Of a stretch of 64,000 nt of DNA, positions 6,350 through 61,584 are shown piece after piece (the first letter of the stretch is position 1; each line of letters begins with the position of its first letter). The notes under the pieces were generated by a model that did no database searches, was not told where the DNA came from, and saw nothing but the letters and a program-made list of their open reading frames with translations. Source of the stretch: Mobula birostris (Eukaryota); contig NC_092395.1 in the NCBI RefSeq assembly GCF_030028105.1, forward strand, positions 43,924,459 through 43,988,458. Direction: 5' to 3'. The position numbers were made by a program, and so were the translations under genes.

Positions 6350-9300
6350 AGAAACACAGAAACATAGAAAACCTACAGCACAATACAGACCATTCGACCC
6401 ACAAAGTTGTGCCAAACATGTTCCAACATTAGAAATTACTAGGTTTACATACAGCCCTCTGTTTTGCTAAGCTCCATGTACTTATCCAGAAGTCTCTTAA
6501 AAGACCCTATCGTATCCACCTCCACCACTGTTGCCGGCATCCCATTCCACGCACTCACCACTCTTTACATAAAAAAACTTACCCCTGACATCTCCGACGT
6601 ACCTACTCCCCAGCACCTTAAAACTGTGCCCTCTTGTGGCAACCATTTCAGTTCTGAAGAAAAGCTTCTGACTATCCACACGATCAATGCCTCTCATCAT
6701 CTTATACACGTCTATTAGGTCACCTCTCATCCTGCGTTGTTCCAAGGAGAAAAGGATGAGTTCACTCAACCTATTCTCATAAGGCATGCTCCCCAATCCA
6801 GGCAACATCCTTGTAAATCTCCTCTGCACCCTTTCTCTGGCTTCCACATCCTTCCTGTAGTGAGGCGACCAGAACTGAGCACCGTACTCCAAATGTGGTC
6901 TGACCAGGGTCCTATATAGCTGCAACATTACCTCTCGGCTCCTAAATTCAATTTTCCGATTAATGAAGACCAATACAGCGTATGCCTTCTCAACCACAAA
7001 GTCAACCGGCGCAGCTGCTTTAAGCGTCCTATGGACTCAGACTCAACAATGGGTCCCTCTGATCCTCCACGCTACCAAGAGTCTTACCATTAATGCTATA
7101 TCTGCCATCACATTTGACAAACCAAACTGAACCACTTCACACTTATCTGTGTTGAACTCCATCTGTCACTTCTCAGCCCAGTTTTGCATCCTATCAATGT
7201 CCTGCTGTCAACTCTGACAGCCCTCCAAGCTATCCACAACACCTCCAACTTTTGTGCCTTCAGCAAACTGACTAACAGATTGATCCACCTCTTCATCCAG
7301 GTCATTTATAAAAATCGCGAAGAGTAAGGATTCCAGAACAGATCCCTGAGACACGCCACTGGTCACTGACCTCCATGCAGAATATGACCCGTCTACAACC
7401 ACACTTTGCCTTCTGTGGGCAAGCCAGTTCTAGATTCACAAAGCAATGTCCCCTTGGATCCCATGCCTCCTCACTTTCTCAATTCGCCTTGCATGGGGTA
7501 CCTTATCAAATGTCTTTCTGAAGTCTATATACACTATATCTACTGTTCTTCTTTCATCAATGTGTTTAGTCACATCCTCAAAAAATCAATTAGGCTCGCA
7601 AGGGCAGGTCGTACCAAGCTGACTATTCCTAATCATATTATACCTCTCGAAATGTTCAGAAATCCTGCCTCTCAGGATTTTCTCCATCAACATACCAAAC
7701 ACTGAAGAAAGACTCAGTGGTCTATAATTTCTTGGGCTATCACCACTCCCTTTCTTGAATAAAGGAACAACCTGTGAAACCCTACAACCCTCCGGAACTT
7801 CTCCCATCCCCATCGATGATTCAAAGATCATCGCCAGAGGCTCAGCAATTGCCTCTCACAGTAGCCTGGGGTACATTTCATCCGGTCCTGGCGACTTATT
7901 CAACTTGATAAATTCCAAAAGCTCCAGCACATTCTCTTTCTTAGTACGTACATTCTGAAGTTTTTCAGTCTGCTGCAAGTCATCACTATCCTGAAGTATT
8001 CATTAAGTACCCCTACTATTTCCTCTGGTTCCATACACAGTTTCCCACTGTCACACTCTATAGGTCCTGTTCTTTCATGTCTCATCCTCTTGTTCTTCAT
8101 ATACTTGTAGAATGCCTTGGGGTTTTCCTTAATCCTACCCACCAAGGCCTTCTCCTGGCCCAATCTGGCTCTCCAAATTTCCTTTTTAAGCTCCTTCTTG
8201 TTAGCCTTGTAACCTTCTGGATCTCTAACATTACCTAGCTCTCTGAACCATTTGTAAGCTGTTCTTTTCTTCTTGACTAGATTTATTACAGTCTTTGAAC
8301 ACCACTGTTCCTGTACCCTACCATGATCTCCCTGTCTCATTGGAACGTACCTGTGCAGAACTCCACACAAATATCCCCTGAACATTTGTCACATTTCTTC
8401 TGTACTTTCACCGGAGAACATTGGTTCCTGATAAAGCTTCAAATTTCCTGCCTGATAGCCTCATAATTCCCCTTACTCCAATTAAACACTTTTCTAACTT
8501 GTCTGTTCCTACCTCTCTCCGATCCTATTGTAAAAGAGACAGAATTATGATCTCTATCTCCAAAATGCTCTCCCACTGAGGGATCTGACACCTGACCAGG
8601 TTCCTTTCCCAACACCAAATCAAGTTCATTCTCCCCTCTTCTAGGAAACCTTCCTGAACACACCTAACAAACTCCACCCCGTCCAATTCGCTTGCTCTAG
8701 GGAAATGCCAATCGATATTTGGGAAATTAAAATCTCCCATCACGACAGCATTGTTATTATTACACCTTTCCAGGATCTGTTTCCCTCACTGCTCCTCAAT
8801 ATCTCTGTTACTATCGGGTGGCCTATAAAAACACCAAGTTATTTACCCCTGCCTTTTCCTAACCTCCACCCACAGAGACTCTGTAGACAATCCCTAAATG
8901 ACCTTTACCTTTTCTTCAGCGGTGACACCATCTCTGATCAACAGTGCCACGCCCCACCTCTTTTGATTCCCTCCCTATCCTTTCTGAAACATCTAAAACC
9001 CGGCACTTGAAGTAACCATTCCTGTCCCTGAGCCATCCGAAGTCTCTCTAATAGTGACCACATCATAGCTCCAAGTACTGATCCACGCTCTAAGCTCATC
9101 CGCTTTGTTCACAATACTCCTTATGTTAATATAGACATATCTCAAACCGTCCGTCTGAGCGCATCCCTTCCCTATCACCTGCTTATCCTGCCTCTCGCAC
9201 TGTCAACAAGCTTTCTCTATTTGTGAGCCAACCGCCTCTTCCCCAGTCTCTTCAGTTGGGTTCCCACCCCCTAACAATTCTAGTTTAAACTCTCGCAGTA

Positions 9301-9569: not shown

Positions 9570-11280
9570 CCTTTCCCTGCATGTTACTTATTGTCGAGAG
9601 GTACAGCCACAGAGTGTAATGAATGCCAGCATTAACTTGCCTTCTTCACCAAAGATGCAACCTGTAAATTAACCTTTAGGGAGTCTTGCTCAATGAGTCC
9701 CAAGTCCCTTTCCAGCTCAGTATTTTTCGTATTTTTTCTTCGTTTAGAAAGTAGTCAACCATTTCATTTTTTCTACGATAATGCAGGACCATATAATTCC
9801 ACCTGCCATTTATTTAGCTATTCTCAGAATCAGTGCAAGTCCTCCTGCAGTTTCCGTATTTGCCCAAATCTCCATGCCCCTCAATCTATCTTCATACTCT
9901 CTACAAATTTTGCAACAACACCATCAATTCCATCAGACAAATTATTGACATATATCGTAAAAAGAATCAATCCCAAAAGAGATCCCTGAGGAACACATCT
10001 AGTCCAGAGTAGCCAGCCAGAAAAGGCTTCCTTTAGTGCCACGTTTGCCTCCTGCCAACCAGCCACTGCTTTATCCACGTTGGCATCTTTCCTGCAATAC
10101 CATGGCCTCACAGCTTGTTAAGAGTTTCATGTGAGACTCCTTGTATAAGGCGTTCTGAAAATCAAAGCACACAACATCAAAGACACGTCATTGTCTATCC
10201 TAATTGTTATTTCTTCAATGAATTCCAACTGATTTGTCAGGCAAGATTTTCCCTTGATGATCGCATTCTCACTACAACCTGTTTTATCATGTGCCTACAG
10301 GTAGCCTGAAACCACTTCCTTAACAATTGACTCCAACCATCTTCCCAACCACTGAGGTGAGACTAAGTGGCCTATAATTTCTCTACTTCTGCATTACTTT
10401 CTTCTTGAAGAGCAGAGTGACATTGCTGCTCAGCTGTCATTCCTGCCAGTGTTTTTTTTAAATTAAATCTGGTATACTCCTGTCTCATTCCTCTGTAATT
10501 CCTTTTACTCCATTGTAATACTGACATATCTGACATTAGCTTCTTCTTTTCAAATTTCAGGGTGAATTTTATCATATTATTATCATTTTCCCTTCAGATT
10601 TTTTTTTTAACTTTTATCTGTCTAATCAATTCTTGTTCACTGCACAACACCCAATCCAAAATAACGGATTCTATAGTGGGGTTAACCTCGAGCTGCTCTG
10701 AAAAGCCATCTTGTAGGCACTCTAGAAATTCTCCCTCCTAGAATCCAGCACCAACCTAATTTTCCCAATATACCTTCATACTAAAATTCCCCATGACTAT
10801 TGTCACATTTCCCTTTTGCATGCATTTTCTATCTCCCATTATAATTTGTAAGCCACATCCTTACTACTGTTTGGGGTTCTGTATACAACTCCTGTCAGAG
10901 TCTTTTAATCCTTACAGTTTTTTAGGTCTTTCCACAATGGTTCAATACCTTCTGACCCCATGTCATCTCTTGCTGATGATTTGATTCAATTTTTTAACCA
11001 ATAATCAATGCCACCCCCTTTGACTTCCCACCTGTCCTTTTGATACAATGTGTATCCTTGGACATTAAGCTCTCAGCTGTAATCTTTTCTCAGACATAAT
11101 TCAGTGATTCCTACAACATCATCCCTGCCAAACTGCATCTGTGCTGCAGGTTTTCCTACCTTAATCTGCATTCAAATACAACACCTTCAGTCCTGTATTC
11201 GCCCTTTTCGATTCGGGCTGTCTTTTTTGTTGTAACTCATTCTTTTGATAGCATTTTCCCCATCAACACCTTCTCACTAC
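9570..11280 (-). mobile_element. Second CR1 subfamily copy (APE to RT fragments)
   Basis: VPQGSLLGLILFTIYVNNL...VAKFVESMKI and WSKRNYRGMRQE motifs. Confidence 0.8.
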
Positions 11281-11390
11281 ACTGTAAGGATTAAAAGACT
11301 CTGACAGGAGTTGTATACAGAACCCCAAACAGTAGTAAGGATGTGGCTTACAAATTATAATGGGAGATAGAAAATGCATGCAAAAGGGAA
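10809..11390. repeat. Perfect 110-bp inverted repeat (arms 10809-10918 and 11281-11390, 362-bp spacer)
   Basis: Reverse complement of 11281-11390 matched 10809-10918 with no mismatch when compared block by block. Confidence 0.95.
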
Positions 11391-12790: not shown

Positions 12791-13669
12791 ACGCCGATGA
12801 TAAAAGGCTGTCTCTCCCAAAGGGTTAATAAGCCTGCCTGTGTTTCGGGTCGCTGTGTGTGTGTAGCAATACCGGAGGATCCACCGTGGAGTTCTTCCCG
12901 CTGTCTGCTTGTACCAATGTACACAATAGCTTTTTGCATCTTATTGTTACTCAGTTCAGATTTCATCCCCATATTTGGACAGAATTCAATCCCTCGAACA
13001 GTCAGGGTGGATTCGAGCTCACTATCTGAATGACTTGTGTGGAATTAAGAAGTCTGTACTGTCCGCTCCGTTGTTCTGAAGTTGTGAAGGACATCACTAT
13101 ACGAGGGATAGAAAGTGTTAAGAACTGAATCAGAGAAATAAGGGGAGAAGATTATTTTTTATTTCAAAACCACGGAAGAAAATGTGCAACATTCACAACT
13201 ATAGTTATGATATTCAGTGAGGTAAACTTTAAAAAGCAGACACAAATATGGCACAATATCCACTCATGTGGCTTCCTACGTCGATTCCCCTTTAATTGAT
13301 CAAGAAAATTTCCAGCTTATGCAGTCTTAACTTAGGCTGCACCGAGCTACAACGCACGTAACTGCCGGACTATGCAGTCGGCAGCGACCATCAGTCTTCC
13401 ACCGAGCTTCCAGCAGCACTTCGTGCGTGTCGGCAGCCTATAGATCAGAGGATTGTCTGTTACACATTTGCTGGGGATAAAAAAAAGAGGACACTGACCC
13501 TTGTATCTGCCTTCTTCTGTGCAAATATGGCAGATATGAGACACAGAACAATCTGTTCGTACACTTTTGTTTTATCAACTGATCTGCTCTTTGCCGCCAG
13601 TGACACCGCCTCATCCTGATGGTGTGAGACGGTGAATTGGAAGGTTTCAAATACTTTGCTCTAGTTGAT

Positions 13670-13910
13670 CAGAAACAAGAGAAAATTGGCAGATGCTGGA
13701 AATCCGAGCACCACACACAAAATACTGGAGGAACTCAGCAGGAATGGCAGCATCTTGGGAAAGAGTGAATAGAGATTGAAAGCGTGAATCCGGCGTAGGA
13801 TAGAGAAGCGCACAAATATTACCAAAGGGTTTCGGCCCGAAACGGCGATGGTACTCTTTTGCTAGATGTTGCTTGGCCTGCTGAGTTCCTCTAGAATTTA
13901 GTGTGTGTTG
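13670..13910. mobile_element. Penelope-like terminal-repeat remnant with inverted arms
   Basis: acacacaaaatactggaggaactcagcagg (from 13712) and its imperfect inverse ending at 13907; the same motif recurs at ~1650, ~42540, ~47350 and ~63255. Confidence 0.6.
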
Positions 13911-13936
13911 CTCTGGTTGGTCAGTGTGAGTCTCCC

Positions 13937-13946
13937 TGATTTGCAT
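13937..13946 (+). promoter_or_regulatory. Ig light-chain promoter decamer/octamer (TGATTTGCAT)
   Basis: ATTTGCAT at 13939-13946 in light-chain orientation, TATAA-like at 13974-13978, leader ATG at 14057. Confidence 0.88.
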
Positions 13947-14056
13947 GCGTTTCCTCCCCGGTATGAATGGCTCTATAACTGGGTACATCGGAGACGGCGG
14001 CCGCAGTCTGTCACAGATCCATCGGCTGAAGGGACGTAGGAAGCTGATGGACAGCA

Positions 14057-14105
14057 ATGACACGGACGTTGTGCTTTTTCTGGTCTCTGGCAATGTAGCT
14101 GGGCT
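14057..14105 (+). pseudogene. IgL leader exon (copy A) with in-frame stop
   Basis: MTRTLCFFWSLAM*LG then a phase-1 donor t|GTAAG at 14106; TAG at 14096-14098; 102-bp GT-AG intron to 14207 keeps frame with the V exon. Confidence 0.78.
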
Positions 14106-14207
14106 GTAAGTACAGGCAGCATGGCTGCACCGCCAGCGGTTGTTGATGTGGGCTTTAGGGGTCATGTTAGAGAGTTAATGGTTAAAGTTGTATTCCTGGT
14201 TTTACAG

Positions 14208-14565
14208 CTGGAGAATCCCAGACTCCGACTCAGCCTCCGACCGTGTCGCTGAGTCCAGGTGCTACCGCCACGTTGGAAGGTAACATCGGAACAAAGGATG
14301 ACAGTTATGTATTTTGGTACAAGCAGTCACCGGGAACAGCCCCACAATGGATCCTGTACTACCATCACTCGCTCAGCGCCCCGACCTACGGGCCTGGGTT
14401 TAGCAGCGACCGTTTCACGTCGACAGTCAACAGCGCCAGCACCATTTACCAGTTAATCATAAAAAAATGTGGAGCTGAATGACGCTGCCGTCTATTACTG
14501 CGGAAAGTGGGATTCATCGGGCAGTTATTACTTGTTCGGCCCAGAGACCAAGCTCTTTGTTACAG
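14208..14565 (+). pseudogene. Germline-joined VJ exon of a sigma-like Ig light chain (copy A), disabled
   Basis: tttacag| acceptor; GESQTPTQPPTVSLSPGATATLE(G)NIGTKDDSYVFWYKQSPGTAPQWILYYHHSLSAPTYGPGFSSDRFTST...[frameshift at the A7 run 14461-14467]...VELNDAAVYYCGKWDSSGSYYLFGPETKLFVT g|GTAAG. No RSS or spacer between V and J. Confidence 0.95.
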
Positions 14566-15712
14566 GTAAGTGTCTGGGAAATCCCGCCTGCAATTACAGG
14601 CTTCATGAATATGGTCTCCTGGCAATTAATAATTTATACATTATTATTTCTTGGCGAATTTCACAATGAAAACTCAAATTTACGATCCAGTTGTGCTCGT
14701 TATCGTGTGTCTATGGAGTTGTGTTCAGTGAACATAAAGCTGTGTTGTGAATCATTATCGTCTTTTAAAATGTTTGCTTTTCAGTTGTGTTTTCTTTCTG
14801 GTGCCGTATTTTGTGTCCCTGGCATCTGCACTTTAATATTTCGTTTCTGAAATTGAACGGGGTTTCAGATCTATTAGTTTGGCAGCTTTTGCTTTTGGTT
14901 TGTTGGAAGCCAGCGTGAGGAGTTCCAGCTTCTCAAAATGCGGCCCGAAGTGTCACTGGGGATATGATGTAGTCCACGGTTATCAAAACGACAGTGCGAC
15001 AAGTTTCAAGTTATTGTACGAGGATGCTCCAGTGAAACCTCCCTCGTACTTTCATTGAACTCCCATTTCTCCCGGTCAGGGTAGAACACTCCTGTACACA
15101 CCCATCCAATTGCCTCGTCCTTGCCTCCTGTCTCCTGCCTCCCTTTCACGTGAACACTGCTCTTTTGCGGTACTCCGGCCGCTACACAGACTAAGGCCAG
15201 AGATTATGGTCTGGGGAGAATCCGACCTTCCTTCTCCCACAGTAATTGCTTCGGCATCGCCACAGCTTGACTTCCCGAAACCAGCTCTGTGAAACTCCGG
15301 ACACTGCACTGTGGGTAAGCGCAGAAATAGGTTCCCTCACAGTACAGCTGTGGGGGACACGGGTGGGAGGGCGCGCATTAGTGATGAGTAGATAGAGCAA
15401 CGGGAAGGAACGTGTCACTGTTGACACAGGCCTGGGTAGATCCCAAGAGCTGGAAGTGATGTCACTGAGCTGCTGATGCTGTAATCCAGCGACTCTACCG
15501 GAGAATCCTGAAAAAGGGATTCGACCACAAATGCCTGGTCTTTCAGTGTTGACTAAAATGCACGGCCCTCCGTCCGCGCTGACGCGCACCTTAGCGAAAC
15601 CCATGGCCCCATTCTTGGAAACCAGAACCTTTCACTGGCGCTTCCATCCAACTGTGAAATATCGCGAGATATTCAGTGACCTGAAACATGTGTCCTCTTG
15701 TTCCCGATCCAG

Positions 15713-16035
15713 ATCAGCAGCTCCCCGACCCTTCAGTGAAACTGCTCGGGCCGCCAGCCGAAGAGATCTCCGCTAAAGGAACCGGCACCTTAGATTGCCT
15801 GGCCAGTAAATTGTCGATAGGCTTCCCTGTCGTCAGCTGGACAGTGAACGACAGTCCGACGAGCAGTGATGTGCAAACCAGCGGGGTGACTCAGAACGCG
15901 GACAAAACCTTCAGTCTCAGCAGCTACCTGACGGTGCCCGGCGCAGACTGGAGCAGTGGGAAGAGGTACTCCTGCTCAGTTCAACAAGGAGCAGCCTCGA
16001 CAATATCCGCAACAGTCACACAGTCCAACTGTTAA
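15713..16035 (+). CDS. Ig light-chain constant exon (copy A, sigma-like), open frame
   Basis: ccag| acceptor; DQQLPDPSVKLLGPPAEEISAKGTGTLDCLAS...VSWTV...TFSLSSYLTV...DWSSGKRYSCSV...QSNC*. Both domain Cys, the Trp and the terminal Cys are present; phase matches the VJ donor. Confidence 0.92.
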
Positions 16036-16364
16036 AACAGAGCGTAGCCTCGTACTTGTTTGCTCCGAACAACAGATTTTTGTTTTGCATTTTCACCCCC
16101 TCCACCATTCTCTTCACTGTACTCTATGGTTTCTACTGTGTTGTTAGAATTTTTGCACCGGCACCGGAGACTGATTTTCTTCCGTTTCAGCCACTAGGAA
16201 GCGACGTGGGGTAAAAGTGTCCTGTTACTTACCATCGTTAGAAATATCAGCTAGTGAATTATTTTATCTGTTACCAGGGATAGATGCAATTAAAATTATT
16301 AATGAATGTGCTAATGATTTCTCATCAGTATCAGACTGACAGATGGCAACGGCCACAAACTGCT

Positions 16365-16370
16365 AATAAA
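16365..16370 (+). promoter_or_regulatory. Candidate polyadenylation signal, copy A
   Basis: AATAAA ~330 bp after the stop with downstream GT-rich sequence; positionally conserved in copies B and C. Confidence 0.6.
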
Positions 16371-17639
16371 GATGTTCAGTGCAGGAACGATTTCCGTGTG
16401 TGGGTCTTCTTCTCTCTATGCTCTTCCCGATCTCATCCGGGTGGGAGGAGGGAGGAGACTCGCGCGGGCGAGACGATACCGACCAGGGCCGTCCGGGGGT
16501 TGAAATAAGGTGAGAAATCCTACAGTCTTGTCGTTGGTGGGGGAGGGAGGAGGGGAGCGGGAGAGAGAAAGAGTGAGAGACACAGACAAACCGACAAACA
16601 AAGATTCCTGTGGGCGGGAAAGAAGTGATGAGGTGAGAAAAAGAGACCGCGAAGCAAAGAAGGGCATGAAGTCCGCGTGTCTCTCTCTCGATTTCCTTGC
16701 ACATATTTCCAACTCTAGCACAAGTCGTGACCCAGAATAAGAGAAGATTTCCACGCACTGTATAATATCTTTCAGGACCCCTTCCTCTACTATTTTCTCA
16801 TGGGAAAGTACCAGGCTGTATCTGAAGCTGCTGAATCATCTTCCCTTCCCCGGCAAAGATGTTCTCCACCATTGTCTACTCTCGGAGATTCCCCCAAACA
16901 TGTTCTCCAAACATTCTTGTCGACAAGCTCCCTTATCCTTCCTCAAATCACTCCCGCATTCCGGACTTCTTATAACCTTCCACTGTGCGTTACACGTTTA
17001 GCATATACTAAGAAGAAATCCATGTTAACTTGTTCCTTACACTCCGCCCGTTGATTCTTCTTTGATTGATTATACAAGAGCAAAATACAAACTAAATATA
17101 GGTTGCAAGTTCACTTTGTAATTTTAATATAACCCTGTAAGCAGAGAAATTATCATGATAGACTTCAGAAGGGCAATCGGATAAAAATAAACTGCTGCAG
17201 AAATACCAGAAATGGTACGATTATAACAACTTCCGATGGGAGGCTAAGCCAGAGGTATATTTGAAAGTTTATTCCTTAGCTTCTGCGAACGTGTCGGATG
17301 GGGGGTGTTATCACATCGGAGAATGTCCTCTTCCATTGTCGCTATCCACGTGTTCTTTCTAGGCATCTAGCTAGTACTCTCTATATTTCGATTCGTAGGA
17401 AGACCTATACTGTAGATTGCGATGGTTCTAGCACTTTCAATCTACCCAAAACAGAACAATGCACCGTTATTATTAGTTTTTTTTGAGAGTGGAAAAAATA
17501 TTTTCATTTCGTTATTCTCCCTGTTTAAGCACATCAGTTATTATTTCCCTTGCACTGGTACTAGGTACGTGTTAACATTTTCGATTGTCATAAGATCCCC
17601 ATACAAACGGGAGGCCTTGCAAACCTTACAATCATTTCA

Positions 17640-17815
17640 CCGGAGTACTTCCCGGTGGCCAAACTTTTCTAATTCTGATACTTGTTCCCCTTCCCATTCC
17701 AACGTGTCGATCCATGGTATCCTCGTGTGCCAAATCGAGGCCACACTGAGATTGCAGGGCGCAACACCTCATTTTCCGCCTGAGTGCCCTCCAAACTGAT
17801 GGCATAAATTCCTTC
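17640..17815 (+). mobile_element. Penelope GIY-YIG C-terminal remnant (copy A)
   Basis: HSNVSIHGILVCQIEATLRLQG, paralogous to 21690-22030. Confidence 0.6.
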
Positions 17816-18319
17816 CGGTAAACAAAAATTCCTCCCCCCTCCTTTATTCAACACTCTGACGTTTTACCTACGTATTACTTCACCCTGGGTTCCCTCCTCC
17901 GTCCCTTATTCCCGTTTTCCACTCTTCCCTCGTATCAGATACTTACTTCCGTATCCCTTGACATTTCCCAGTCACTTGGCTTCACCTATCATATTCTAGC
18001 TGGACTCCTTTTCTCCCCGACCCCTACCCTTTAATTCAGACATCTCGTCCCTTCCCTCTCAGTGCTAAAGAACGGTCTCGGTCCGATTTTATCATGCTTG
18101 TACTTCCCTTCCCCACTGTATGAGGCCCATTGCTGCCCTCATCTTCCTCCTACTCTGCTGTACATTTCATCATCAGATGATCCTTGGGGTAAGGATCCGA
18201 AATTCTGGTTGTACAAGGCTTGAGATAGTATTAACAGTAAGGTATGGGTTGATGTTATACTGTGGATGAAAAATCCTTTTTTTTATTTTAATGATGCCTG
18301 CGGGTGGGTGGGGTGGGGT

Positions 18320-19040
18320 AATAGAATGTGTGATACACCCAATGAATGTCCTTACTTTAAAATTTAGACCAATTGTACGATTTTATTTCTTGCCGGTTCC
18401 CATAACAGCTGATAAACTTCTTCAGTCCCTTCAGAGTACGATCTTGATCCGCATATATACATGGAATTGTCATTATACAACTTGAATAGGTGACAACCAT
18501 ACAGTGCAAATATTTAAACCGTTGCTGCCGTGGCGGGGTTTTGATGGAATCAAGTTGGGCAGGCCAGTCTCTTTTCTAATATGGGCAGCTAGTTTTTTTT
18601 GTTTTTTTTTTCCGGAAAGCTCTCCTTTTGACCTGTTGCTGTAAATATATTTCTGTGGCTGAGTTGAATGCAGCGACATTCAATCCTGTAACTCCGCCAT
18701 GGACGTACCCAAACAGGGCTGGGAAAGGAGGACGACTGGACATGGGGATAACAACATTATTCCGTAAATACCCAGAGCTCCAGAAACACCGATAGAAGCC
18801 CCAAAGACCCTATCCCTAGGGGGAGGAAGGATCTTCGAAGATGGACTGTAACTTGAAATTTTAGATGGCTCTGGTCGGCTGCTGTCAGTGGCCTATGCCC
18901 CAGTAGGGGTAATGTCTTTAAGTAATTTTCACCCCATAGGCGAGCTTTCCCGGGGCGTATAGGGGTGGAAACTTCCGTAAAACAGGTACAGTGTTTCTTA
19001 ATACGGTTTTCCCCATGTAATCGGTGCTGGAGGGGTTGGT
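18320..19040 (-). mobile_element. pol: ERV-L-like pol fossil (copy A; RNase H to integrase, 5'-truncated)
   Basis: Minus frames give CFTEVS (WFTDGS-like), DQDRTLKGLKKFISCYGNRQEIKSYNWSKF and KDIHWVYHTFYYP; paralogous to the B and C fragments. Confidence 0.68.
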
Positions 19041-19077
19041 GGCCGAACAAGTAATAACTACCCGATGAATCCCACTT
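19041..19077 (-). other. Inverted 37-bp CDR3/J fragment of a joined VJ
   Basis: Reverse complement aagtgggattcatcgggtagttattacttgttcggcc (KWDSSGSYYLFG) matches 14505-14541 at 36 of 37 bases. Confidence 0.92.
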
Positions 19078-19784
19078 CAGGATGCGCAAGTGAAACCTCC
19101 CTCGTACACTTACTGAACTTCCATTTGTCCAGGTCAGAGTGGTACACTCCTGTAGACACCACTCCAATTTCTCAGCCTTTGCTTCCTCTCTCCCGCCACC
19201 TTTTCACCTGAGCACTGCTCCTTTTGTGGTACAGCCGCTCGGTGTTACCGGTCGCTGCACTGTCTAAGACTAGAGCTGCGGCTCTGGGGAGAATCCCCTC
19301 TTCCTTATCTCACAGTAATTGCTTCGGCATCGTCACAACGTGACTTCCCTAAACCAGCTCGGTGAAACTCCGGACCACGCACATGTTGCCCTGCGCTCTG
19401 GGTAAGCGCAGAAATAGGTTTACTCTGATTACAGCTGTGGGTGATACGCATTTGTTGTGAGTGGATGGAGCAAAGGGAAGGAACGTGCCACTATTGGCAC
19501 AGGCCAAAGTGGATACCAAGAGCTGGAGGTGACGTCACCGAGCTGGTGATGCTGCAATCCAGCTACTCTACAGGAAACTCCTCAAACAGGGATTTGACCA
19601 CAAATGTCTAGTCTTTTAGTGTTGACTAAAATGCACTGCCCTCCATCGGCACTGACGCGCACCCTACGAAACCCTGGGCCCCATTCTTGGAAAATGGACC
19701 TTTTCACTCGCGCTTCCATCCAACGGTGAAATATCGCGAGATAATCCGTGACCTGAAACTTGTCTCCTCTTGTTCCCGATCCAG

Positions 19785-20106
19785 ATCAGCAGCTCCCCGA
19801 CCCTTCAGTAAAACTGCTTGGGCCGCCTGCCGAGGAGATCTCCGCTAAAGGAACCGGCACCTTAGTCTGCCTGGTCAGTAAGCTGTCGGTGGGCTTTCCT
19901 ATCGTCAGCTGGACAGTGGACGGAAGTGTGACCAGCCGTGAGGTGAAAACCAGCGCGGTGAGGCGGGACACGGACAGCACTTTCAGTCTCAGCAGCTCCC
20001 TGACGGTGCCCGGCACAGACTGAAACAGTGGCAAGGTGTATCCTGCGTGGTTAAACTAGGAGCAGACTCAACGACATCAGCAAAAGTCGCACAATCCAGC
20101 TGTTAA
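19785..20106 (+). pseudogene. Ig light-chain constant exon (copy B), disabled and V-less
   Basis: DQQLPDPSVKLLGPPAEEISAKGTGTLVCLVSKLSVGF...; TGG>TGA at 20021-20023 and a 1-nt deletion in the YSC codons; preceded by a partial J-C intron (19079-19784, paralogous to 15021-15712). Confidence 0.93.
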
Positions 20107-20458
20107 AACAAAGAGCGGCCTCCGACTTGTTTGCTCCGAACAACAAATTTATTTATTTTTGCACCCTCCACCCCTCTCTACCACTCTCTTCACTGTACTC
20201 CGAACACTGATCAGAGCTCTGTTGTTCCCATTGTGTTGTTAGAACATTTGCACCCGAGAATGATTTTTTTTTTCTCTGTTTCATTCGCCGAGAAGCTACG
20301 TGGGGTAAAAGTGGCCTTTTTCTTGTCATCATTACAAATATCAGCTGGTGAATTGTTTTATCTGTTACCAGAGATGGATCTAATTAAAGTTATTACTGAA
20401 TGTGCTAACGATTTCACGTCAGTATCAGACTGACAGATGGTAACTGCCACAAACTGCT

Positions 20459-20464
20459 AATAAA
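20459..20464 (+). promoter_or_regulatory. Candidate polyadenylation signal, copy B
   Basis: AATAAA in the same context as 16365. Confidence 0.55.
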
Positions 20465-21689
20465 GATGTTCAGTGTAGGAATGATTTCCATGTGGGAGTC
20501 TTGTTCTCTTGTGTGCGCTTCCCATTCTCATCCGGGTGGGAGGAGGGAGGTGACTCGTGCGGGCTAGAAGGCGCCGACCAGTGTAGTCCGGGGGTTGAAA
20601 TAAGTTGAGAAATCCTACATTCTTGCCGTTGGTGGAGGTGGGAAAGAGGGGAGGGGGAGAGAGAAAGAGCGAGAGACACAGACAAACCGGCAAACGGAGA
20701 GACCTGGGGGAGGACAAAATTGATGAGGTAAAAATAAGAGACCGCGAAGCAAAGAAGGGCATGGGGTCGGAGTGGTAGGGATGACTCTCTCTCGATGTCT
20801 TTGTACCTATTGAAACTCTAGCACTAGTTGTGACCCCGAATAAGAAAAGATTCCATGCAGCGGATAATATCTTTCAGGACTCCTTGCCCCAATATTTTCC
20901 CATGAGAATGTACCAGGCGGTACCTGCAGCCGCTGAATCATCTTCTCTTCCCAGACAAAGATGTTCTCCACCACTGTCTACTCTTGGAGATTCTCCAAAC
21001 ATTGTAATGGAAGAGTTCCTTTGTCCTTTCTCAAAACACTCCCACATTCCAGACTAGCATCTTATAACCTTCCACCGTGTGTTACACATTTAGCATATAC
21101 GAAGAAGGAATCAATATTAACTTTTTCCTTGCACTCCGCCCATTAATTCCTCTTTGGTAGATTATACAAGAACAAAATACAGACTAAATACAGGTTGCAA
21201 GTTCACTTCGTAACTCTAATGTAATCATTTAAGCAGTACAATTATCACAAAAAGACTTCATAATGGCAGTCGGATAAGGATAAACTGCTGTACAGACACC
21301 ACTAATGGTAAGATTATAGCAATTTACGATGGGATGCTGAGCCACAGGTATATTTGAAAGTTTGTTTCTTAGTCCCCAGGAACGTCTCGGGGCGAGGGGT
21401 GTTATCACATCGGAGGATGTCTTCTTCCATAGTGGCTATTAGCGTGTCATTCCCGAACGTCCGGACAGCGCTCTCCATATCTCGATTCGAAGGAAGACCT
21501 ATGTCGCGGATTGCAATGGTTCTAGCACTTTTAATCGACCTGAAGCAGAACAATGCACCACTATTATCGATTTTTAAAATTATTATCATTTTGTTATTCT
21601 CCCTGTTTTAGCACATCAGATACTCTTTCCCTTGCACGGATACTACATACGTGTTATCATCATTTTCGATTGCCATAATCTCCCCATTT

Positions 21690-22030
21690 CATACGGGAGA
21701 CCTTGCAAACCTTGCAATCACTTGACCTACAAATCTACTGGGATCCGTTCATGTGTCTCGTGCTTTCGGCGCGGCCCCTCTACATTGGTGAGACGTAAAT
21801 TGAGGGATCGCTTCGTAGAGCAACTCCGCACCATTTGCCACGAGCGGGACTTCGCGGTGGCCAAAAATTTTAATTCTGATACTCGTTCCCGTTCCGGTTC
21901 CAACGTGTCGATCCATGGCTTCCTCTTGTGCCAAGACGAGGCCACCCTGAGGGTGGAAGAGCAACACTTCCTTTTCCGTCTTGGTACCCTCAACCTGATG
22001 GCATAAATATCGAATTATCCTTCCGATAAA
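21690..22030 (+). mobile_element. Penelope GIY-YIG endonuclease remnant (copy B)
   Basis: RRKLRDRFVEQLRTICHERDFAVAKNFNS...VSIHGFLLCQDEATLRVEEQHFLFRLGTL matches the recalled Penelope GIY-YIG C-terminus. Confidence 0.75.
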
Positions 22031-22479
22031 CAAAAATTCTTACCCCTCCTCTATTCATCACTCTGACCTTTTACCTTCCCATTACTTCACCCTGAGTCCC
22101 CTCCTCCGTCCCTTACTCCCATTGTCTACTTTTCCCGCCTATTCGATTCTCACTTCCATATCCCTAGATCTTTCCTATTCACCCGGCTTCACCTATCATA
22201 TTCCAGTTAGCCTCCTTTCCCTCTCCCACCCCTACCCTTTCAGTCAGGCATCTTGTCCCTTCTGTCTCAGTCCTAAAGAAGTGTCTGGGTCCGATTTTAT
22301 CATGTTTGTACTTTCCCTTCTCTCTGTATGACGCCGATTCGGCCCGGTATCTTTTTCTTGTTCTGAAGTATTTTTCATCATCAGAAGTTATGATTGTACA
22401 AGGCTTGAGATAGTATGTGCAGCAAGTTATGGGTTGATGTTAACAGACGAGAAGTCCATTCATTCTTTTAATTTGAACT

Positions 22480-23490
22480 GGTGCCTGGGGGATGATAGGA
22501 TGTTTGATACACCCAGTGAATGCCTTTGCTGGCAGTCCAGTGTTTCATTGCTCGCCCTGAAAATTGAGACCAATTGTACGATAGTATTTCTTGGGGGTTC
22601 CTATAATAACTGATATACTTCTTCAATCCATTCAGCGTATGATCGGATCCGTCTATATACATGGAATTGTCATTATACGACTTGAATAGGCGTCAACCAT
22701 ACAGTGCAAGTCTTTAAATCGTTGCTGCCGTGGCGGGTTTCTGATGAAATCAATCTTTTCTCTTTTCTAATACGGGCAGCTAGTTTCTCGGGAAGGCTCT
22801 CTTTTTGACTTATTGCTGAAAACATGTCCCCGTGACTGAGTTAAATGCAGCGAGTTTCCACTCCTGTAACTTCACCATGGACGCTCCCAAACATGGCTGG
22901 GGAAAGAGGCGGATTGGACATGGGGATAACAACCACATTACGTAAATACCCAGAGCTACAGACACGCCAACAGAAGTTCCAAAGACCCTATCCCCAGGGA
23001 GTTGAAGTATCTTCGAAGATGGGCTAAACTTAAGGTTCTGGTCCAGGATAGAGGACTCCGGCCAACGGCTGTCAGCGATCTTTGCCCCAGTAGGGGTTTC
23101 CACCCCGGTAGGCCTAATTTCCCGGGACGTACAGGGATGAAAACTTTCGTAAACCAGGTATAGTGTTTCTTAATACGGCAATCCCAATGTAATCGGTGGT
23201 GGGGATGGGGTGGGGGAGAGGCTGACACAGGGACGGGTGGTTTGATAGTCCCTGTACATCCATCCACGGACATGCTACATGCTGACACGCCGCCGAGTCC
23301 TCACTTGTTGTTTCTTCAATGTACCACTTCCGCTTTATAATTGAGATTTGTCGTTCCTTCTGCGTTTTGTTCGCGCATACCTCCGTGAGCACGCTCGTCA
23401 TGATGAGGAGGTAGGGTTTCATAGTGACCTCGCTTCTTTCTGTAACCGCTTCTGTCTCCACTAAAGTCAATATGTCCATGCGGAAACAGC
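22480..23490 (-). mobile_element. pol: ERV-L-like pol fossil (copy B; RT connection, RNase H, integrase core)
   Basis: LVETEAVTERSEVTMKPYLLIMTSV...ISIIKRKWYIEE; HYTWFTKV; MVDAYSSRIMTIPC; GLKKYISYYRNPQEILSYNWSQFSG; KGIHWVYQTSYHP. Motifs are colinear with recalled ERV-L pol. Confidence 0.78.
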
Positions 23491-23833
23491 TAACGCCAGC
23501 AGGCCAGACAGCATGAATATTAAAATGAAGTCGATGTTTCGGCCGGGCCCTTCATCAGGACTGGAACATAACGGGGAACACGTCGGAATAAATAAAGTGG
23601 TGGGGATGGAGGGGAAGGACAGGTGTGTCTCTTCACATAACCATAGACAAACGTGAGTCTATCTCAGCCGAATGTAGTCAGTGCGGAAGCCTTCACATAG
23701 AGTGGAAAGAACCAATGGTTCAGACCCGCTGAGAATCGAAATACTTCTCCAGCTCCGACATTATTAATTACTCTGAAACTGTGTCCCTCAGGAGGAAATG
23801 TAACCTGTAATAGATATTAAATATTATATGTAA

Positions 23834-52959: not shown

Positions 52960-55900
52960 CTTTTACATGTATACGAATAAAGAAAGGAGCTATGATGTTG
53001 TGGCCATTACAGAGACTGGGATGGTGCAGAGGCAGGCATGGCTACTTCAAGTACCAGGCTTTAGGTATTTCAGAAAGGACAGGGAGGGAGGGAAAAGAGG
53101 TGGAGACGTTGATCAGAGATAGTGTCCCGGCTGCAGAAGATGAGGAAGTTATGGAGGGGTTTCCTACAGATTTTCTGTGAGTGGAAGCTAGGAATAGGAA
53201 GGTTTCAATAACTGTTCTGGGTGTTTTAATAGACCACTCAATAGTAAGAAGGACATCGAGGAGCAGATAGGAAAACAGATTCTTCAAAGGTGTAATAATA
53301 ACAGGGTTGTTGTGGTTGGTGATTTTAATTTCCCAAATATTGATTGGCAACTCCCTAAAGTGAGGGGCTTAAATGGGGTGGAGTTTGTTTGATGTGTTCA
53401 TTAAAGGATTCTTGACACAATTAGTAGATAAGCCTACAAGAGGAGAGGCTGTACTTGATCTGGTATTGGGAAATGAAGCGTGTCATGTGTCAGATCTCTC
53501 AGTGGGAGAAAATGTCGGAGATAATGATCACAATTCTATCTCCTCTACCATAGCACTGGAGAGGGATAGGAACAGACAAATTAGAGAAACGTTTAATTGG
53601 AGTAAGGGGAAATATGAAGCCATCAGGCAGGAACTTGGAAGCATAAATTAGAAACAGATGTTCTCAGGGAAACGTACGGAAGAAATGTGGCAAATGTTCA
53701 TGGCTGCATAGGTACATTCCGATGTGACATGGGAAAGATGGTAGGGTACAGGACCCGTGATGTACAAAGGCTGTTATAAGTCTCGTCAAGAAGAAGAGAA
53801 GAGCTTCCGAAAGGTTCAAAAAACTAGGTAATGATAGAGAACTAGAAGATAATATGGCTAGCGGGAAGAAGCTTAAGAATAACATTACGAGAGCCAGAAA
53901 GCCTTGACGGACGTGATAAAATAAAATTCTACATGTATGTGAAGAGCAAGAGGATAGGACGTGAGAGAACAGGACCAATCAAGTGTGACAGTGAAGAAGT
54001 GTGTATGGAACCGGAGGAGATAGCAGAGGTACTTAATGAATACTTTGCGTCAGTATTCACTACGGAAAAGGATCTTGGTGATTGTAAGAATGACTTACAA
54101 TGGACTGAAAAGCTTGAGCATGTAGATATTAAGAAAGAGGACGTGCTGGAGCTTCTGGAAAGTATCAAGTTGGATAAGTTACGGAGGCTGGACGGGATGT
54201 ACCCCGGGAGCGAGGAAGGAGATTGCAGAGCCTCTGGCGATGATCCTTGCATCATCAAGGAGGACAGAAGAGGTTCCAGAGGATTGGTGGGTTGCGTATG
54301 TTGTTCCCTTATTCACGAAAGGGAATAGAGATAGCCCAGGAAATTATAGACCAGTAGTCTTACTTCTGTGGTTGGTAAGTTGATGGAGAAGATCCTGAGA
54401 GACATGATTTATGAATATTTGCCGAGGCATAATATGACTAGAATAGTCATCATGGCTTTGTGAAAGGCAGGTCGTGCCTTATGGGCCTGATTGAATTTTT
54501 TGAGGATGTGACTAAACACTTCGATGAAAGTAGAGCCCTAGATGCTGTGTATATGGATTTCAGCAAGGCATTTCATAATGTACGCCTTGGAAGGCTTATT
54601 GAGAAAATAAGGAGGCAGGGGTTCCTGTCACGGTCCGGTCCGTGAAGTCTGCATTCCGGTTCACCATCCAGTCTGTGGATTCCGTACTCCGGCAATTCCC
54701 TTTTTCCCTTGTTCATTTGGGTGCCTTAATTGAGGCACCTGATTCTCGTTTCGGGCTGCATCGTCCTCGTCAGTAACCTCGTCTGCAACGTCGTCAGTAA
54801 CCTCGTCTGCGCTGGGTAGGTCCGGCCATTTTGCCACTACCCTGAGTGGGGATTGAATATTCGTGTTCTCGTCTCCGCTGTGTAGGTAGGTCCGGCCGTT
54901 TCGTTGCTACTCTGAGTTGGGAACTGTCTCTTCATGTCCTGTGTCCAAGGAGGTGCCCCGGCTCAGTGCATTGTGTCCTGTGTCTAAGAAGAATCCCGGC
55001 TTTATCCTGTGTCCAAAGAGGAGCCCTGGCTCAGTATTCCATCTTCTGTGTCCGGCTGTGTGTCCTCTGTCCAAGGAGAAGCCCCGACACAGTGTTCCAT
55101 GTGCTCTGTCTAAGAATAGTCCCGGCTCTATGACCTAAGTCCAAGGAGGAGTCCCGGCTCTATGAACAAAGGTTCAAAGCCAAGCCCGCGTCAAGTCCAA
55201 GCCAAGCCCGCGTCAAGCCCCGAGTCCTATTCCAGAGTCAACTGTAGACCCAGGTACCGAGTCCCTACCAAGACCCGTGTTCCTAGTCATTACTTAAGCT
55301 CCTTGTAGAGTTATAGCCCCAAATCCAGTTGCAGGTTTTCTGGTTTGCCACTCTGTGACTATGTTCATGTTATATTTTTGTCCTCGCCCCTTGGCTTCCC
55401 TAGGATTCTAAGTTTATTCTTACTCCAGTTCCTAGTACATCAGTGTCCGTGTCTTCCATTTGGGTCCGCTCCCGTCGCCCACTTATGACAGATCCAAGGG
55501 GACAATGCTTTCTGGATCCAGAACTGACTTGCCCACAGAAGGCACAGTGTGGTTGCAGACGGGTCATATTCTGCATGGAGATCTTTGACCAGTTGTGTGC
55601 GTCAGGGATCTGTTCTAGAACAATGTACCCTTCGTGGCTTTTATGAACGACCTGGATGAGGAAGTGGAGGGATGGGTTAGTAAATTTGATGATGACACAA
55701 AGGTTGGAATAGTGTGGAGGGCATTAATGGCACGATTCTTCGCAGTGTGGAGGATCAGAGAGATCTTGGGGTCCGAGCCCATAAGACGATCAAAGCTGAT
55801 ACGTAGGTTGACTCTGTGGTTAAGAAGGCGTACGGTGCACTGGCCTTCATCAATCCTGGGATTGAGTTTAAGAGCCGAGAGGTAATGTTACAGCTTTATA

Positions 55901-56455
55901 GGACCCTGTTCAGACCCCACTTGGAGTACTGCGCTGAATTCTGATCGCCTCACTACAGGAAGGACGTGGAAACCATAAAATGGATGTAGAGGAGATTTAC
56001 AAGGATGTTGTCAGGATTGTGGAGCATGCCTTATGAGAACAGGTTATGTGAACTCGGCCTTTTCTCCTTGGAGCGACGGAGGATGAGAGGTGACCTAATA
56101 GATGTGTACAAGACAATGAGCGGATTGATCGTGTGGATAGTCAAAGGCTTTTTCCTAAGGCTGAAATGAGTAGGACGAGGGAGCATAGTTTTAAGGTGCT
56201 TGGAAGGAGTTATAGTGGAGATGTCAGGGGTGAGTTGTTTTCCGCAGTGAGTGGTGAGTGCGTGGAATGGGCTGCCGGCGGCAGTGGTGGAGGCGGAACC
56301 GATAGATCTTTTAAGAGACTCCTGGATGGATACATGGAGCTTAGGAAAATATAGGGCTGTGGATAAGCCTAGGTAGTTCTAAAGTAAGGACATTTTCGGC
56401 ACAGCTTTGTGGGCCGAAAGGCCTGTATTGTGCTGTAGGTTTTCTATGTTTCTCT
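52960..56455 (+). mobile_element. Long CR1 LINE ORF2 copy split by a solo LTR
   Basis: VVVGDFNFPNIDW, KGRSCLMGLIEFFEDV...YMDFSKAF, SKFDDDTKVG and a (ttctatgt)-type tail at ~56440. Confidence 0.9.
54626..55490. mobile_element. Solo LTR (865 bp) inserted in the CR1 RT
   Basis: TGTCA...TGACA termini; 5-bp TSD GTTCC/GATCC (one mismatch); CR1 sequence continues on both sides; internal tandem repeats at ~54930-55160. Confidence 0.85.
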
Positions 56456-56669
56456 GTTCCTTTGTTTCTAACATGGGACACACTTGCCCCTCCTGTACCT
56501 CCCCACCACATTTAATGTCGCGTGTTCCCCATTCTATTCCCGTCCGGATGAAGGAAGTCGCCCTGAAACATCGACTGTTTATTCATTTTCATATTCATGC
56601 TGTCTGGCCTGCTGGTGGTCCTCCAGATTTTGCGCTTATGCACTAAATAAATAGAATCCTGCGTTAGGT

Positions 56670-57700: not shown

Positions 57701-58169
57701 ATTTAAAGAATGCGTGGACTGTTCGTGCATTCCTTGCTGAAAGCATTATCCCGCGCCTTGTACAACCTGAACAACGGATCCTTACCCCAAGATCGCAAAT
57801 ATACTTCAGGACAGGAAGAAGAAGCGGGCGCCAACGGGCCTCATACAGAGGGGAAGGATAGTGCAAACATGATATAATCGGACCGAGACTGTTCTTTATC
57901 ACTGAGAGAGAAGGAGCGAGATGCCTGAATTAAAGGGTGGGGGTGGGGGAGGGAAAGGAGGTAAGCTGGAATGTAATAGCTGAAGCCAGGTGGATGGGTA
58001 AGGTCAAGGGATAGGGAAATAAGAATCTGACAGGAGAGAACAGCGGACAGTGAGAGAAAGGGACGGAGGGTGGGACCCAGGGTAAATTAATAGACAGGTA
58101 AAAACTTTGAATGGTTAATAAAGGGGAGGGGACATTTTTTGTTTAACGGAAGTAGAAATCGATATTTAT

Positions 58170-58430
58170 GCCATCAGGTTGGATTGTACTCAGACGGAAT
58201 ATGAGTTGTTGCTCCTCCACCCTCAGGGTAGCCTGCTCTTGGCACAAGGTGCGGGGGGCATGGGTCGTCACGTTGGAAGACGAACAGGAACGAGAGGCCG
58301 CTCCGAAAGCACGGGCCACATTAGACGACCCCAGCAGATTCGCGGGTGAAGTTTTGCCTCACCCGGAAAGAATGTTTGGATCCTGTATGGACGTGACGGA
58401 GGAGATGTGCGGGAGGGAAAGTATGTGAGC
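58170..58430 (-). mobile_element. Penelope GIY-YIG remnant (copy C)
   Basis: Minus strand reads QEQATLRVEEQQLIFRLSTIQPDGINIDF; paralogue of 21690-22030. Confidence 0.7.
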
Positions 58431-58491
58431 ATATTCCAACTTAACTACTCTGCAAGGAGGAGGTGGTGGCAAACGGAAATGAGGGTACATA

Positions 58492-61578: not shown

Positions 61579-61584
61579 TTTATT
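61579..61584 (-). promoter_or_regulatory. Candidate polyadenylation signal, copy C
   Basis: TTTATT on plus, in the same context as copies A and B. Confidence 0.55.

What the first reader, a model, noticed from the sequence alone, without database searches (positions are those of the whole stretch)
19041..19080. Inverted 37-bp CDR3/J scar exactly at the breakpoint where copy B lost its V gene
Copy A's 3' flank stops at 19040. Next come 37 bp that are the reverse complement of the VJ junction (KWDSSGSYYLFG, 36/37 identical to 14505-14541), one linker base, and then the J-C intron, which resumes about 455 bp downstream of the normal donor. This resembles a templated insertion from replication template switching or end-joining. 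It shows that B once had, or copied from, a joined VJ with the same junction. The fragment appears more similar to A than the neighbouring flanks do, and it is curious that the captured piece is the former recombination joint, although 37 bp is a small sample.
Basis: partly seen in the sequence, partly recalled or inferred. Interest (0 to 1): 0.72.

Follow-up and report, generated by a model that had tools for sequence, protein, structure and literature searches.

The report
Inverted CDR3 patch at rearrangement scar
A 37-base upside-down copy of an antibody light-chain V-J joint sits exactly where a dead, V-less gene copy was fused to its neighbour; it is a real but ordinary repair or replication scar with no sign of a special role for the joint.

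Summary
Window 19041-19077 is the reverse complement of 14505-14541 at 36/37. These are the only two places in the 4.0-Gb genome that match within 3 mismatches, and short-read contigs from four runs of one sample bridge the junction without a difference.

The setting is a cartilaginous-fish immunoglobulin light-chain cluster locus in which most V-J pairs are already joined in the germline. Copy A (leader, VJ, C, truncated 3' flank) abuts cassette B. B starts 455 bp into the J-C intron and has a dead C exon.

The patch has sharp edges, 2-3 nt of possible microhomology on one side and 0-1 nt on the other. Its template lies about 0.5 kb upstream of the intron breakpoint. This fits a one-off templated insertion (template switching or polymerase-theta-type end joining) made during a single non-homologous rearrangement.

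Whether that event deleted B's V or made a V-less partial tandem duplicate cannot be decided, because A, B and the D/E/F clusters form an unresolved, mosaic trichotomy.

The high identity is not significant: A's 37-mer equals the subfamily consensus, and one change in the patch has P about 0.14-0.23. No cryptic recombination signals flank any breakpoint. Two other V-less cassettes break at different places and carry no patch.

Ordinary; low interest.

The parts
19041..19077 (-). 37-nt inverted patch. Read on the minus strand it encodes K W D S S G S Y Y L F G, the CDR3 and the start of J from a germline-joined VJ.
   Evidence: 36/37 to 14505-14541; unique in the genome; bridged by contigs of 4 runs
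19078..19078 (+). Single unassigned base C between the patch and B's intron. The paralogues have G here, so it is either untemplated or a later G-to-C change.
   Evidence: alignment of A, B, C, D, E, F, G35, H36 at the right junction
14505..14541 (+). Template, or present-day homologue of the template, in copy A: the V-encoded part of CDR3, the V-J joint at about 14533-14535, and the first 6-8 nt of J.
   Evidence: position of the joint taken from unjoined sister clusters with RSS
14057..14105 (+). Leader exon of copy A, with TGG changed to TAG at 14096-14098. The Ig octamer ATTTGCAT lies at 13939-13946.
14207..14566 (+). Germline-joined VJ exon of copy A (V-set domain). It has one extra A in the run at 14462-14468 (frameshift), and J reads FGPE where the family has FGPG.
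14567..15712 (+). J-C intron of copy A. Position 15021 is the homologue of B's first base.
15713..16035 (+). C exon of copy A (C1-set domain), open through to its stop codon.
16036..19040 (+). 3' flank of copy A, cut off at 19033-19040 in a G-rich stretch. It contains a dispersed repeat at about 18690-18925.
   Evidence: depth spike at 18831-19027
19079..19784 (+). Cassette B: the remaining 3' part of the J-C intron. There is no leader, V or J.
19785..20106 (+). Cassette B: dead C exon, with TGG changed to TGA at 20021-20023 and a 1-nt deletion near 20041.
20107..23629 (+). Cassette B: 3' flank. It runs on past the homologue of A's breakpoint (about 23212) in register with copies C, D, E and F.

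Best explanation
The 37 nt are a templated, inverted patch left by one non-homologous germline rearrangement in an immunoglobulin light-chain cluster array.

A 3' end in the G-rich 3' flank of cluster A (about 19040) left its template. It primed on the opposite strand of a germline-joined VJ exon about 0.5 kb upstream of the final landing site and copied 37 nt. It then switched again into the J-C intron at +455 and continued. This is the pattern of MMBIR/FoSTeS-type template switching or of polymerase-theta-type end joining with a reverse-complement templated insert.

The product is A followed directly by a cassette (B) without leader, V or J. B has since decayed and the patch has no function.

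Shown: the patch, its uniqueness, its sharp edges, the two breakpoints, and B's dead C exon. Inferred: the mechanism, and that the patch and the junction arose in the same event.

Not resolved is whether the event was a deletion between two complete tandem clusters, with B's own VJ as template (my odds about 55%), or a 4.06-kb partial tandem duplication of A 15021-19040, with A's VJ as template (about 30%). The remaining 15% covers cases in which the patch and the junction arose in separate steps.
For: - The match is 36/37, inverted and unique in the genome.
- Identity drops to random at both edges, so this is not the stump of a larger decayed copy.
- The junction is bridged without a difference by contigs of 4 runs.
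- The template lies 480-516 bp upstream of the intron position where B resumes. This short distance is what serial template switches or snap-back synthesis give.
- The left junction offers 2-3 nt of microhomology (GG/GGC), with imperfect extension into the ancestral flank (7/11).
- B, C, D, E and F all continue in register beyond A's breakpoint, so A's flank is the truncated one.
- Published junction patterns of this kind: MMBIR templated insertions with 2-12 bp of often imperfect microhomology (PMC8421209), and deletions and tandem duplications carrying templated inserts made by polymerase theta (PMC7368036).
- A second, independent inverted patch lies in C-exon relics L057/L058 of the same locus.
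- For a deletion rather than a duplication: B is nearer to D/E/F (86-89%), which have complete VJ exons, than to A (80%). A+B as sisters is the least-favoured resolution of the tree (log-likelihood 4.86 lower, p-AU 0.13). Another V-less cassette, L044, keeps a short (22-23 nt) match to far-upstream cluster sequence but lacks V and most of J.
Against: - The right junction has 0-1 nt of microhomology and one unassigned base, which is weak for a microhomology-primed switch.
- About 10% divergence per lineage has blurred both junctions, so the original microhomology cannot be read.
- The left edge is uncertain by about 11 nt. With a 5-nt gap, 19030-19040 also aligns 8/11 with the next bases of J.
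- Deletion against duplication is undecided. Informative sites split 12 (A+B), 18 (B+DEF) and 18 (A+DEF), and they cluster along the sequence. The 5' part of A has a different affinity from its 3' part, so the history is reticulate.
- All read support comes from one individual.
Confidence: 0.8

Rival explanations
1. The patch is younger than the A|B junction. It would have been put in later by a separate repair event or a short conversion copied from A's VJ, which would explain why it is 97% identical while the flanks are 76-80%.
For: 36/37 against 80% (15021-17641) and 76% (17647-19030) for A against B. If both donor and patch had drifted at the neutral rate, P(1 change or fewer) would be 0.005.
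Against: The donor did not drift neutrally. A's 37-mer is identical to the consensus of seven clusters sharing this joint, and A's VJ exon has only 9 unique changes in 360 bp. Measured against that consensus, the patch has 1 change where 2.8-3.5 are expected on B's branch (P = 0.14-0.23; 0.07-0.11 with A's slow change added). A second event landing exactly on an existing breakpoint is less parsimonious.
Confidence: 0.08
2. The 37 nt are the last recognisable stump of a longer inverted VJ, or of a whole inverted cluster, that once lay between A and B and was otherwise deleted or decayed.
For: With a 5-nt gap, a further 11 nt to the left align 8/11 with the next part of J. Other short inverted V relics exist near these clusters, such as the FR2-like relic at 12876-12926, which is also found upstream of E and F.
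Against: Inside the piece identity is 97%; outside it is 4/16 and 4/18. Decay would not leave such a step. The right edge passes straight into B's intron. The 11-nt extension lies in a G-rich stretch that aligns about as well with the ancestral flank.
Confidence: 0.06
3. RAG cut the germline-joined gene at cryptic recombination signals in germ cells (a germline analogue of V replacement or editing), and the excised CDR3 piece was re-inserted inverted.
For: RAG is thought to have joined V and J in shark germ cells (PMC2193156). This locus holds both joined and unjoined clusters with good RSSs. The V-side end of the piece lies 2 nt past the position of the FR3 heptamer-like TACTGCG.
Against: Best heptamer/nonamer scores within 6 nt of each of the breakpoints are 11-14 of 22, and 31-94% of random places in the window score as high. 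The true RSSs of an unjoined sister cluster score 21 and 17. TACTGCG has GCG where the cleavage-proximal GTG is needed. The V-J joint lies inside the piece, not at an edge. Two other V-less cassettes break elsewhere.
Confidence: 0.03
4. Assembly artefact: a chimeric join or a misplaced read fragment.
For: All supporting reads come from the sample that probably gave the assembly.
Against: Four runs, assembled independently by Logan, each give a contig that crosses 19041-19078 with 150 nt or more on each side, no mismatch and no gap, at the depth of the single-copy flanks. No alternative joint is seen.
Confidence: 0.02

Closest known systems
Templated insertions at structural-variant junctions (MMBIR/FoSTeS template switching; PMC8421209)
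   Same: A short insert copied from a nearby template in inverted orientation, sitting at the junction of a copy-number change. Microhomology is short and possibly imperfect, and more than one switch occurred in a single event.
   Different: The events catalogued in that paper mostly use templates within about 100 bp. Here the template is about 0.5 kb from one breakpoint and 4.5 kb from the other in today's coordinates. One junction shows 0-1 nt of microhomology. The event is old (about 8-11% divergence per lineage), so the enzymes cannot be inferred.
Polymerase-theta-mediated end joining with templated inserts at deletions and tandem duplications (PMC7368036)
   Same: Either a deletion or a kilobase-scale tandem duplication whose junction carries an insert matching sequence nearby. 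Reverse-complement inserts are expected from snap-back priming.
   Different: 37 nt is long for a typical insert of that kind, and the template is not in the immediate flank. Dependence on the polymerase cannot be tested from sequence.
Germline-joined V-J light-chain clusters of cartilaginous fishes (PMC2193156; PMC2192082; review PMC5192425)
   Same: Many V-J-C clusters, most with V and J fused in the germline beside unjoined sisters with 12/23 RSSs. Subfamilies share one joint, and there are many pseudogenes.
   Different: Those papers concern how the joints arose. In the few papers I read (a review and one section of a primary paper, so this is not a survey), I found no account of a V-less cassette whose breakpoint carries an inverted copy of the joint. 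Here the joint is only cargo, not the actor.
V-gene replacement and receptor editing through the cryptic heptamer at the end of FR3 (from my own knowledge; not checked in a paper here)
   Same: It would cut a joined gene just upstream of CDR3, close to the V-side end of the copied piece.
   Different: The local heptamer is degenerate at the critical positions, there is no nonamer, and the other three breakpoints have no signal.

Membership tests
Templated insertion at a rearrangement junction (MMBIR/FoSTeS or polymerase-theta class) | The inserted bases at the junction have an identifiable template nearby on the same chromosome. | tested here: met
   36/37 to 14505-14541; only two copies in 4.0 Gb; template 480-516 bp upstream of the homologue of the right breakpoint
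Templated insertion at a rearrangement junction (MMBIR/FoSTeS or polymerase-theta class) | Discrete edges: similarity to the template stops at the ends of the insert. | tested here: met
   4/16 and 4/18 matches beyond the edges. A possible 11-nt extension with a 5-nt gap on the left remains ambiguous.
Templated insertion at a rearrangement junction (MMBIR/FoSTeS or polymerase-theta class) | Microhomology at each switch point. | tested here: inconclusive
   Left junction: 2-3 nt (GG/GGC) in a G-rich stretch, 7/11 with extension. Right junction: 0-1 nt plus one unassigned base. Both are blurred by later substitutions.
Templated insertion at a rearrangement junction (MMBIR/FoSTeS or polymerase-theta class) | The junction exists in the DNA and not only in the assembly. 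| tested here: met
   Bridging contigs in 4 runs of one sample, with 0 differences
Templated insertion at a rearrangement junction (MMBIR/FoSTeS or polymerase-theta class) | Dependence on a specific polymerase or pathway. | not testable with these tools
   An ancient germline event; only the scar remains.
Simple tandem segmental duplication (B as a partial copy of A) | The two copies lie head to tail, and the downstream copy carries the uninterrupted distal flank. | tested here: met
   A 15021-19030 corresponds to B 19079-23202. B's flank continues in register with C, D, E and F.
Simple tandem segmental duplication (B as a partial copy of A) | The two copies are each other's closest relatives. 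| tested here: inconclusive
   A, B and (D,E,F) form a trichotomy (100/100 for the clade). A+B as sisters has log-likelihood 4.86 lower, p-AU 0.134. B is 86-89% identical to D/E and 80% to A. The informative sites are mosaic.
RAG-mediated rearrangement at cryptic RSS | A heptamer with CAC at the cleavage border, plus a nonamer at a 12 or 23 spacer. | tested here: not met
   Scores of 11-14 of 22 at all breakpoints, no better than 31-94% of random places. The controls score 21 and 17.
Cartilaginous-fish Ig light-chain V-J-C cluster with germline-joined VJ | A V-set exon fused to J without an RSS, followed by an intron and one C1-set exon, with unjoined sister clusters that keep their RSSs. | tested here: met
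   Pfam V-set and C1-set. About 25 clusters lie on one contig, three of them with V-RSS, about 380 bp, then RSS-J. A shared joint defines the subfamily.
Cartilaginous-fish Ig light-chain V-J-C cluster with germline-joined VJ | Isotype (sigma, as earlier notes of this scan propose). | not tested
   Only generic light-chain C-region neighbours were found. The V 12-RSS and J 23-RSS fit kappa or sigma, but this is no proof.

The most novel reading that the evidence does not exclude
Germline-joined antibody genes are themselves break-prone in germ cells, for example through lesions targeted to CDR3 by the lymphocyte machinery (RAG at degenerate signals, or AID). On this reading, the copying of the joint into the junction records such a targeted break, which would make these loci self-remodelling in the germline beyond V-J fusion.
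Probability: 0.03. Interest if true: 0.6.

Novelty: new member of a known kind. Interest (0 to 1): 0.2.

Why it matters
The scar gives a clean, datable example of how antibody light-chain cluster arrays in a cartilaginous fish gain dead, V-less cassettes. The route is ordinary non-homologous repair or replication errors rather than the V(D)J machinery. It adds a small piece to the picture of birth-and-death and mosaic evolution of these arrays. It opens no new question. Its main practical use is for annotation: the minus-strand CDR3-like ORF at 18757-19167 is not a gene.

Tried and rejected
- **Cryptic RSS at the breakpoints:** scored heptamer and nonamer against random places and true RSS controls. 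No signal.
- **Patch younger than the flanks:** rejected as unsupported once the subfamily consensus and A's slow VJ exon were taken into account.
- **Deletion versus partial duplication by phylogeny:** four segment trees, a concatenated tree with AU tests, and counts of shared derived sites and indels all left a trichotomy. An apparent A+DEF shared indel at 15321-15373 proved to be an alignment artefact; A and B each have their own 14-nt deletion there.
- **B as the positional equivalent of the V-truncated 'C-type' clusters downstream of D/E/F:** rejected. B falls in the A/D/E/F clade with 100/100 support.
- **Other donors or recurrences of the 37-mer in the genome:** none.
- **Inverted VJ pieces at the breakpoints of two other V-less cassettes (L044, L055):** none.
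- **Reads:** the sequencing-run tool was busy twice before it answered. No run from another individual holds the stretch, and no RNA run holds it.
- **Isotype:** not settled.

Full report
**Observation.** Window 19041-19077 is the reverse complement of 14505-14541 at 36 of 37 positions. The single difference is 19060 A against the complement of 14522 C; in coding sense this turns GGC into GGT. Outside the 37 nt the similarity drops at once to random (4/16 and 4/18 matches). No shuffle of the window gives such a match. In the whole 4.0-Gb assembly only these two places match at 3 mismatches or fewer.

A's homology to all paralogues ends at 19033-19040. B's homology to the J-C intron begins at 19079, equivalent to A 15021, which is 454-455 bp after the J splice donor. 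19078 C is unassigned. Logan contigs from four runs of one sample each cross the junction with no difference and no gap, and no alternative joint appears. The feature is therefore real in that animal. Because the sample is probably the assembly's source, this says nothing about other individuals.

**Setting.** The window lies in an immunoglobulin light-chain cluster array of about 1.3 Mb on one contig. The array has roughly 25 V-J-C clusters, almost all on the minus strand. Most have V and J fused in the germline. Three keep V, a CACAGTG-12-nonamer signal, about 380 bp, a 23-type signal, and then J. This is the arrangement long known from sharks and skates (PMC2193156, PMC2192082, PMC5192425). 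An earlier, unchecked note of this scan calls the animal a giant manta ray and the isotype sigma. I tested neither claim; the C exon only finds generic light-chain C regions.

**Copy A (plus strand).**
- An octamer lies at 13939-13946.
- The leader exon is 14057-14105.
- The joined VJ exon is 14207-14566.
- The intact C exon is 15713-16035.
- The 3' flank is cut off at about 19040.

A is nevertheless a pseudogene. It has TGG changed to TAG in the leader (14096-14098), one extra A in the run at 14462-14468, and FGPE in place of the family's FGPG in J. In the contigs, three of four runs agree with the extra A. One run shows a contig with one A fewer, at twice the single-copy depth, which is probably a paralogue.

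**Cassette B.** B has no leader, V or J. Its C exon carries a TGA at 20021-20023 and a 1-nt deletion. B's 3' flank runs on past the homologue of A's breakpoint, in register with copies C, D, E and F.

**What the 37 nt contain.** Comparison with the unjoined clusters places the V-J joint of A at about 14533-14535. The piece is therefore mostly V-encoded CDR3, the joint, and 6-8 nt of J. The joint lies inside the piece, near one end, and not at an edge.

**Is the patch 'too similar'?** A against B is 80% and 76% identical on either side of the junction, so 97% looks striking. However, seven clusters (A, E, F, G35, H36, I47, C) share this same joint. Each of the others differs from A's 37-mer by 3-4 positions at different sites, so A's version is exactly the consensus. 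A's whole VJ exon has only 9 unique changes in 360 bp (2.5%), against a terminal branch of 0.11 in intron and flank. The sound comparison is therefore patch against consensus: 1 change where B's branch (0.076-0.094) predicts 2.8-3.5, giving P(1 or fewer) = 0.14-0.23. Adding A's slow change gives 0.07-0.11. The excess similarity is not significant and does not call for a recent event.

**History of the copies.** Trees of the shared segments put A, B and the trio D/E/F in one clade (100/100), sister to the clade of C, H36 and I47. Within the first clade the three lineages form a trichotomy.
- B is nearer to D/E (86-89%) than to A (80%).
- A+B as sisters is the least-favoured resolution but is not rejected (log-likelihood 4.86 lower, p-AU 0.134).
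- Shared derived substitutions split 12 (A+B), 18 (B+DEF) and 18 (A+DEF), and they cluster along the sequence.
- The 5' part of A (13535-14733) is as close to E as D is, or closer. From 15116 onward D and E are 91-97% alike, while A is 83-89% to either.

The history is thus reticulate, probably through conversion among clusters.

Two scenarios give the same layout. In the first, two complete tandem clusters lost the stretch from A's distal flank to B's intron +455. In the second, segment 15021-19040 of a single cluster was duplicated in tandem. D/E/F have complete VJ exons and an uninterrupted flank across A's breakpoint. The duplication scenario therefore needs A and B to be sisters, or D/E/F to be recombinants. 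Together with the slightly better fit of a later event to the single change in the patch, this makes me prefer deletion, roughly 55 to 30, with the remainder for multi-step histories. This is an inference and not a result.

**Mechanism.** In both scenarios the junction reads: flank, then 37 nt copied from the opposite strand of a joined VJ exon lying 480-516 bp upstream of the landing site, then intron. This is the signature of serial template switching (MMBIR/FoSTeS) or of end joining with a reverse-complement templated insert (PMC8421209, PMC7368036). At the left junction the ancestral flank, read from B, D, E and F, offers GG/GGC and an imperfect 7/11 match to the start of the patch. At the right junction there is 0-1 nt. 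About 10% divergence per lineage has blurred both junctions.

The same locus holds a second, independent inverted patch. In the C-exon relics L057 and L058, the forward sequence is followed by a 57-nt inverted copy of the preceding bases and then resumes.

**Role of the joint or of RAG.** I scored heptamer plus nonamer with 12 or 23 spacers on both strands. The best scores within 6 nt of each of the breakpoints are 11-14 of 22, and 31-94% of random places in the window score as high. The true signals of an unjoined sister cluster score 21 and 17. The FR3 heptamer-like TACTGCG is wrong at the positions next to the cut.

Two further cassettes lack V. L044 begins about 9 nt before the J donor and L055 at about +160 of the intron. 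Neither has an inverted VJ piece at its edge. That a 37-nt template happens to cover the joint is a post-hoc coincidence of a few per cent, among many landmarks that would have seemed equally curious.

**Verdict.** This is a real, well-defined and functionless scar of a known kind, in a well-known kind of locus. It is a new example, not a new phenomenon.

Noticed in passing
L057:1537-1855 and L058:1501-1865 (contig C30 at 44.119 and 44.036 Mb, plus strand): C-exon relics in which the forward sequence (A-equivalent up to 15955) is followed by a 57-nt inverted copy of A-equivalent 15916-15972 and then resumes at 15973. This is a snap-back type inverted patch, present at two loci, so it was duplicated after it formed.
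   Followed up: partly
window 12876-12926, minus strand: A 51-nt FR2-like V relic (41/51 to 14305-14355; reads ..HWYKQTAGRTPRWIL..), inverted, 1.3 kb upstream of A's VJ. The same relic lies upstream of clusters E and F. Its edge coincides with the point (A-equivalent 14315) where the C-type clusters' V exons are cut.
   Followed up: partly
window 14057-14566: Copy A carries three inactivating lesions: leader TAG at 14096-14098, one extra A at 14462-14468, and J FGPE. Yet its VJ exon has changed far less (2.5%) than its intron and flank (11%). Either it died recently or it has been refreshed by conversion.
   Followed up: partly
window 13535-16673 compared with L031 (D) and L032 (E): Mosaic affinity. 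The 5' part of A (to about 14733) is as close to E as D is, or closer. From 15116 onward D and E are 91-97% alike and A is 83-89% to either. This suggests recombination or conversion among clusters.
   Followed up: partly
window 56477-64000 (copy C, minus strand); L036/L019; L047/L014: Three clusters whose V exon starts only at FR2 (A-equivalent 14315). Each lies 3.4-8.7 kb downstream of a complete cluster (D, E or F), so a two-cluster unit appears to have been duplicated three times. Copy C's joint also has one extra base relative to the subfamily.
   Followed up: partly
L044 (C30:42.9105 Mb) and L055 (C30:43.7395 Mb): Two further V-less cassettes. Their homology to complete clusters begins about 9 nt before the J donor (L044) and at about +160 of the J-C intron (L055). 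Their upstream DNA could not be fetched.
   Followed up: partly
window 18690-18925: A dispersed repeat in the 3' flank, with more than 1,300 candidate copies genome-wide and a contig depth of 70-223 against 5-10 beside it. It is shared by A, B and C and so is older than these copies. D/E/F lack A-equivalent 18746-18880 and also 16673-18434.
   Followed up: partly
window 10809-10918 and 11281-11390: A perfect 110-nt inverted repeat with 362 nt between the arms, about 3 kb upstream of copy A.
   Followed up: no
window 6353-9072 against 52986-56458: The DNA upstream of A, in plus orientation, is homologous (75-82%) to the continuation of copy C's 3' flank, at the point where B's homology to C stops (23629). 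This fits a periodic array that has been inverted here relative to the rest of the locus.
   Followed up: no
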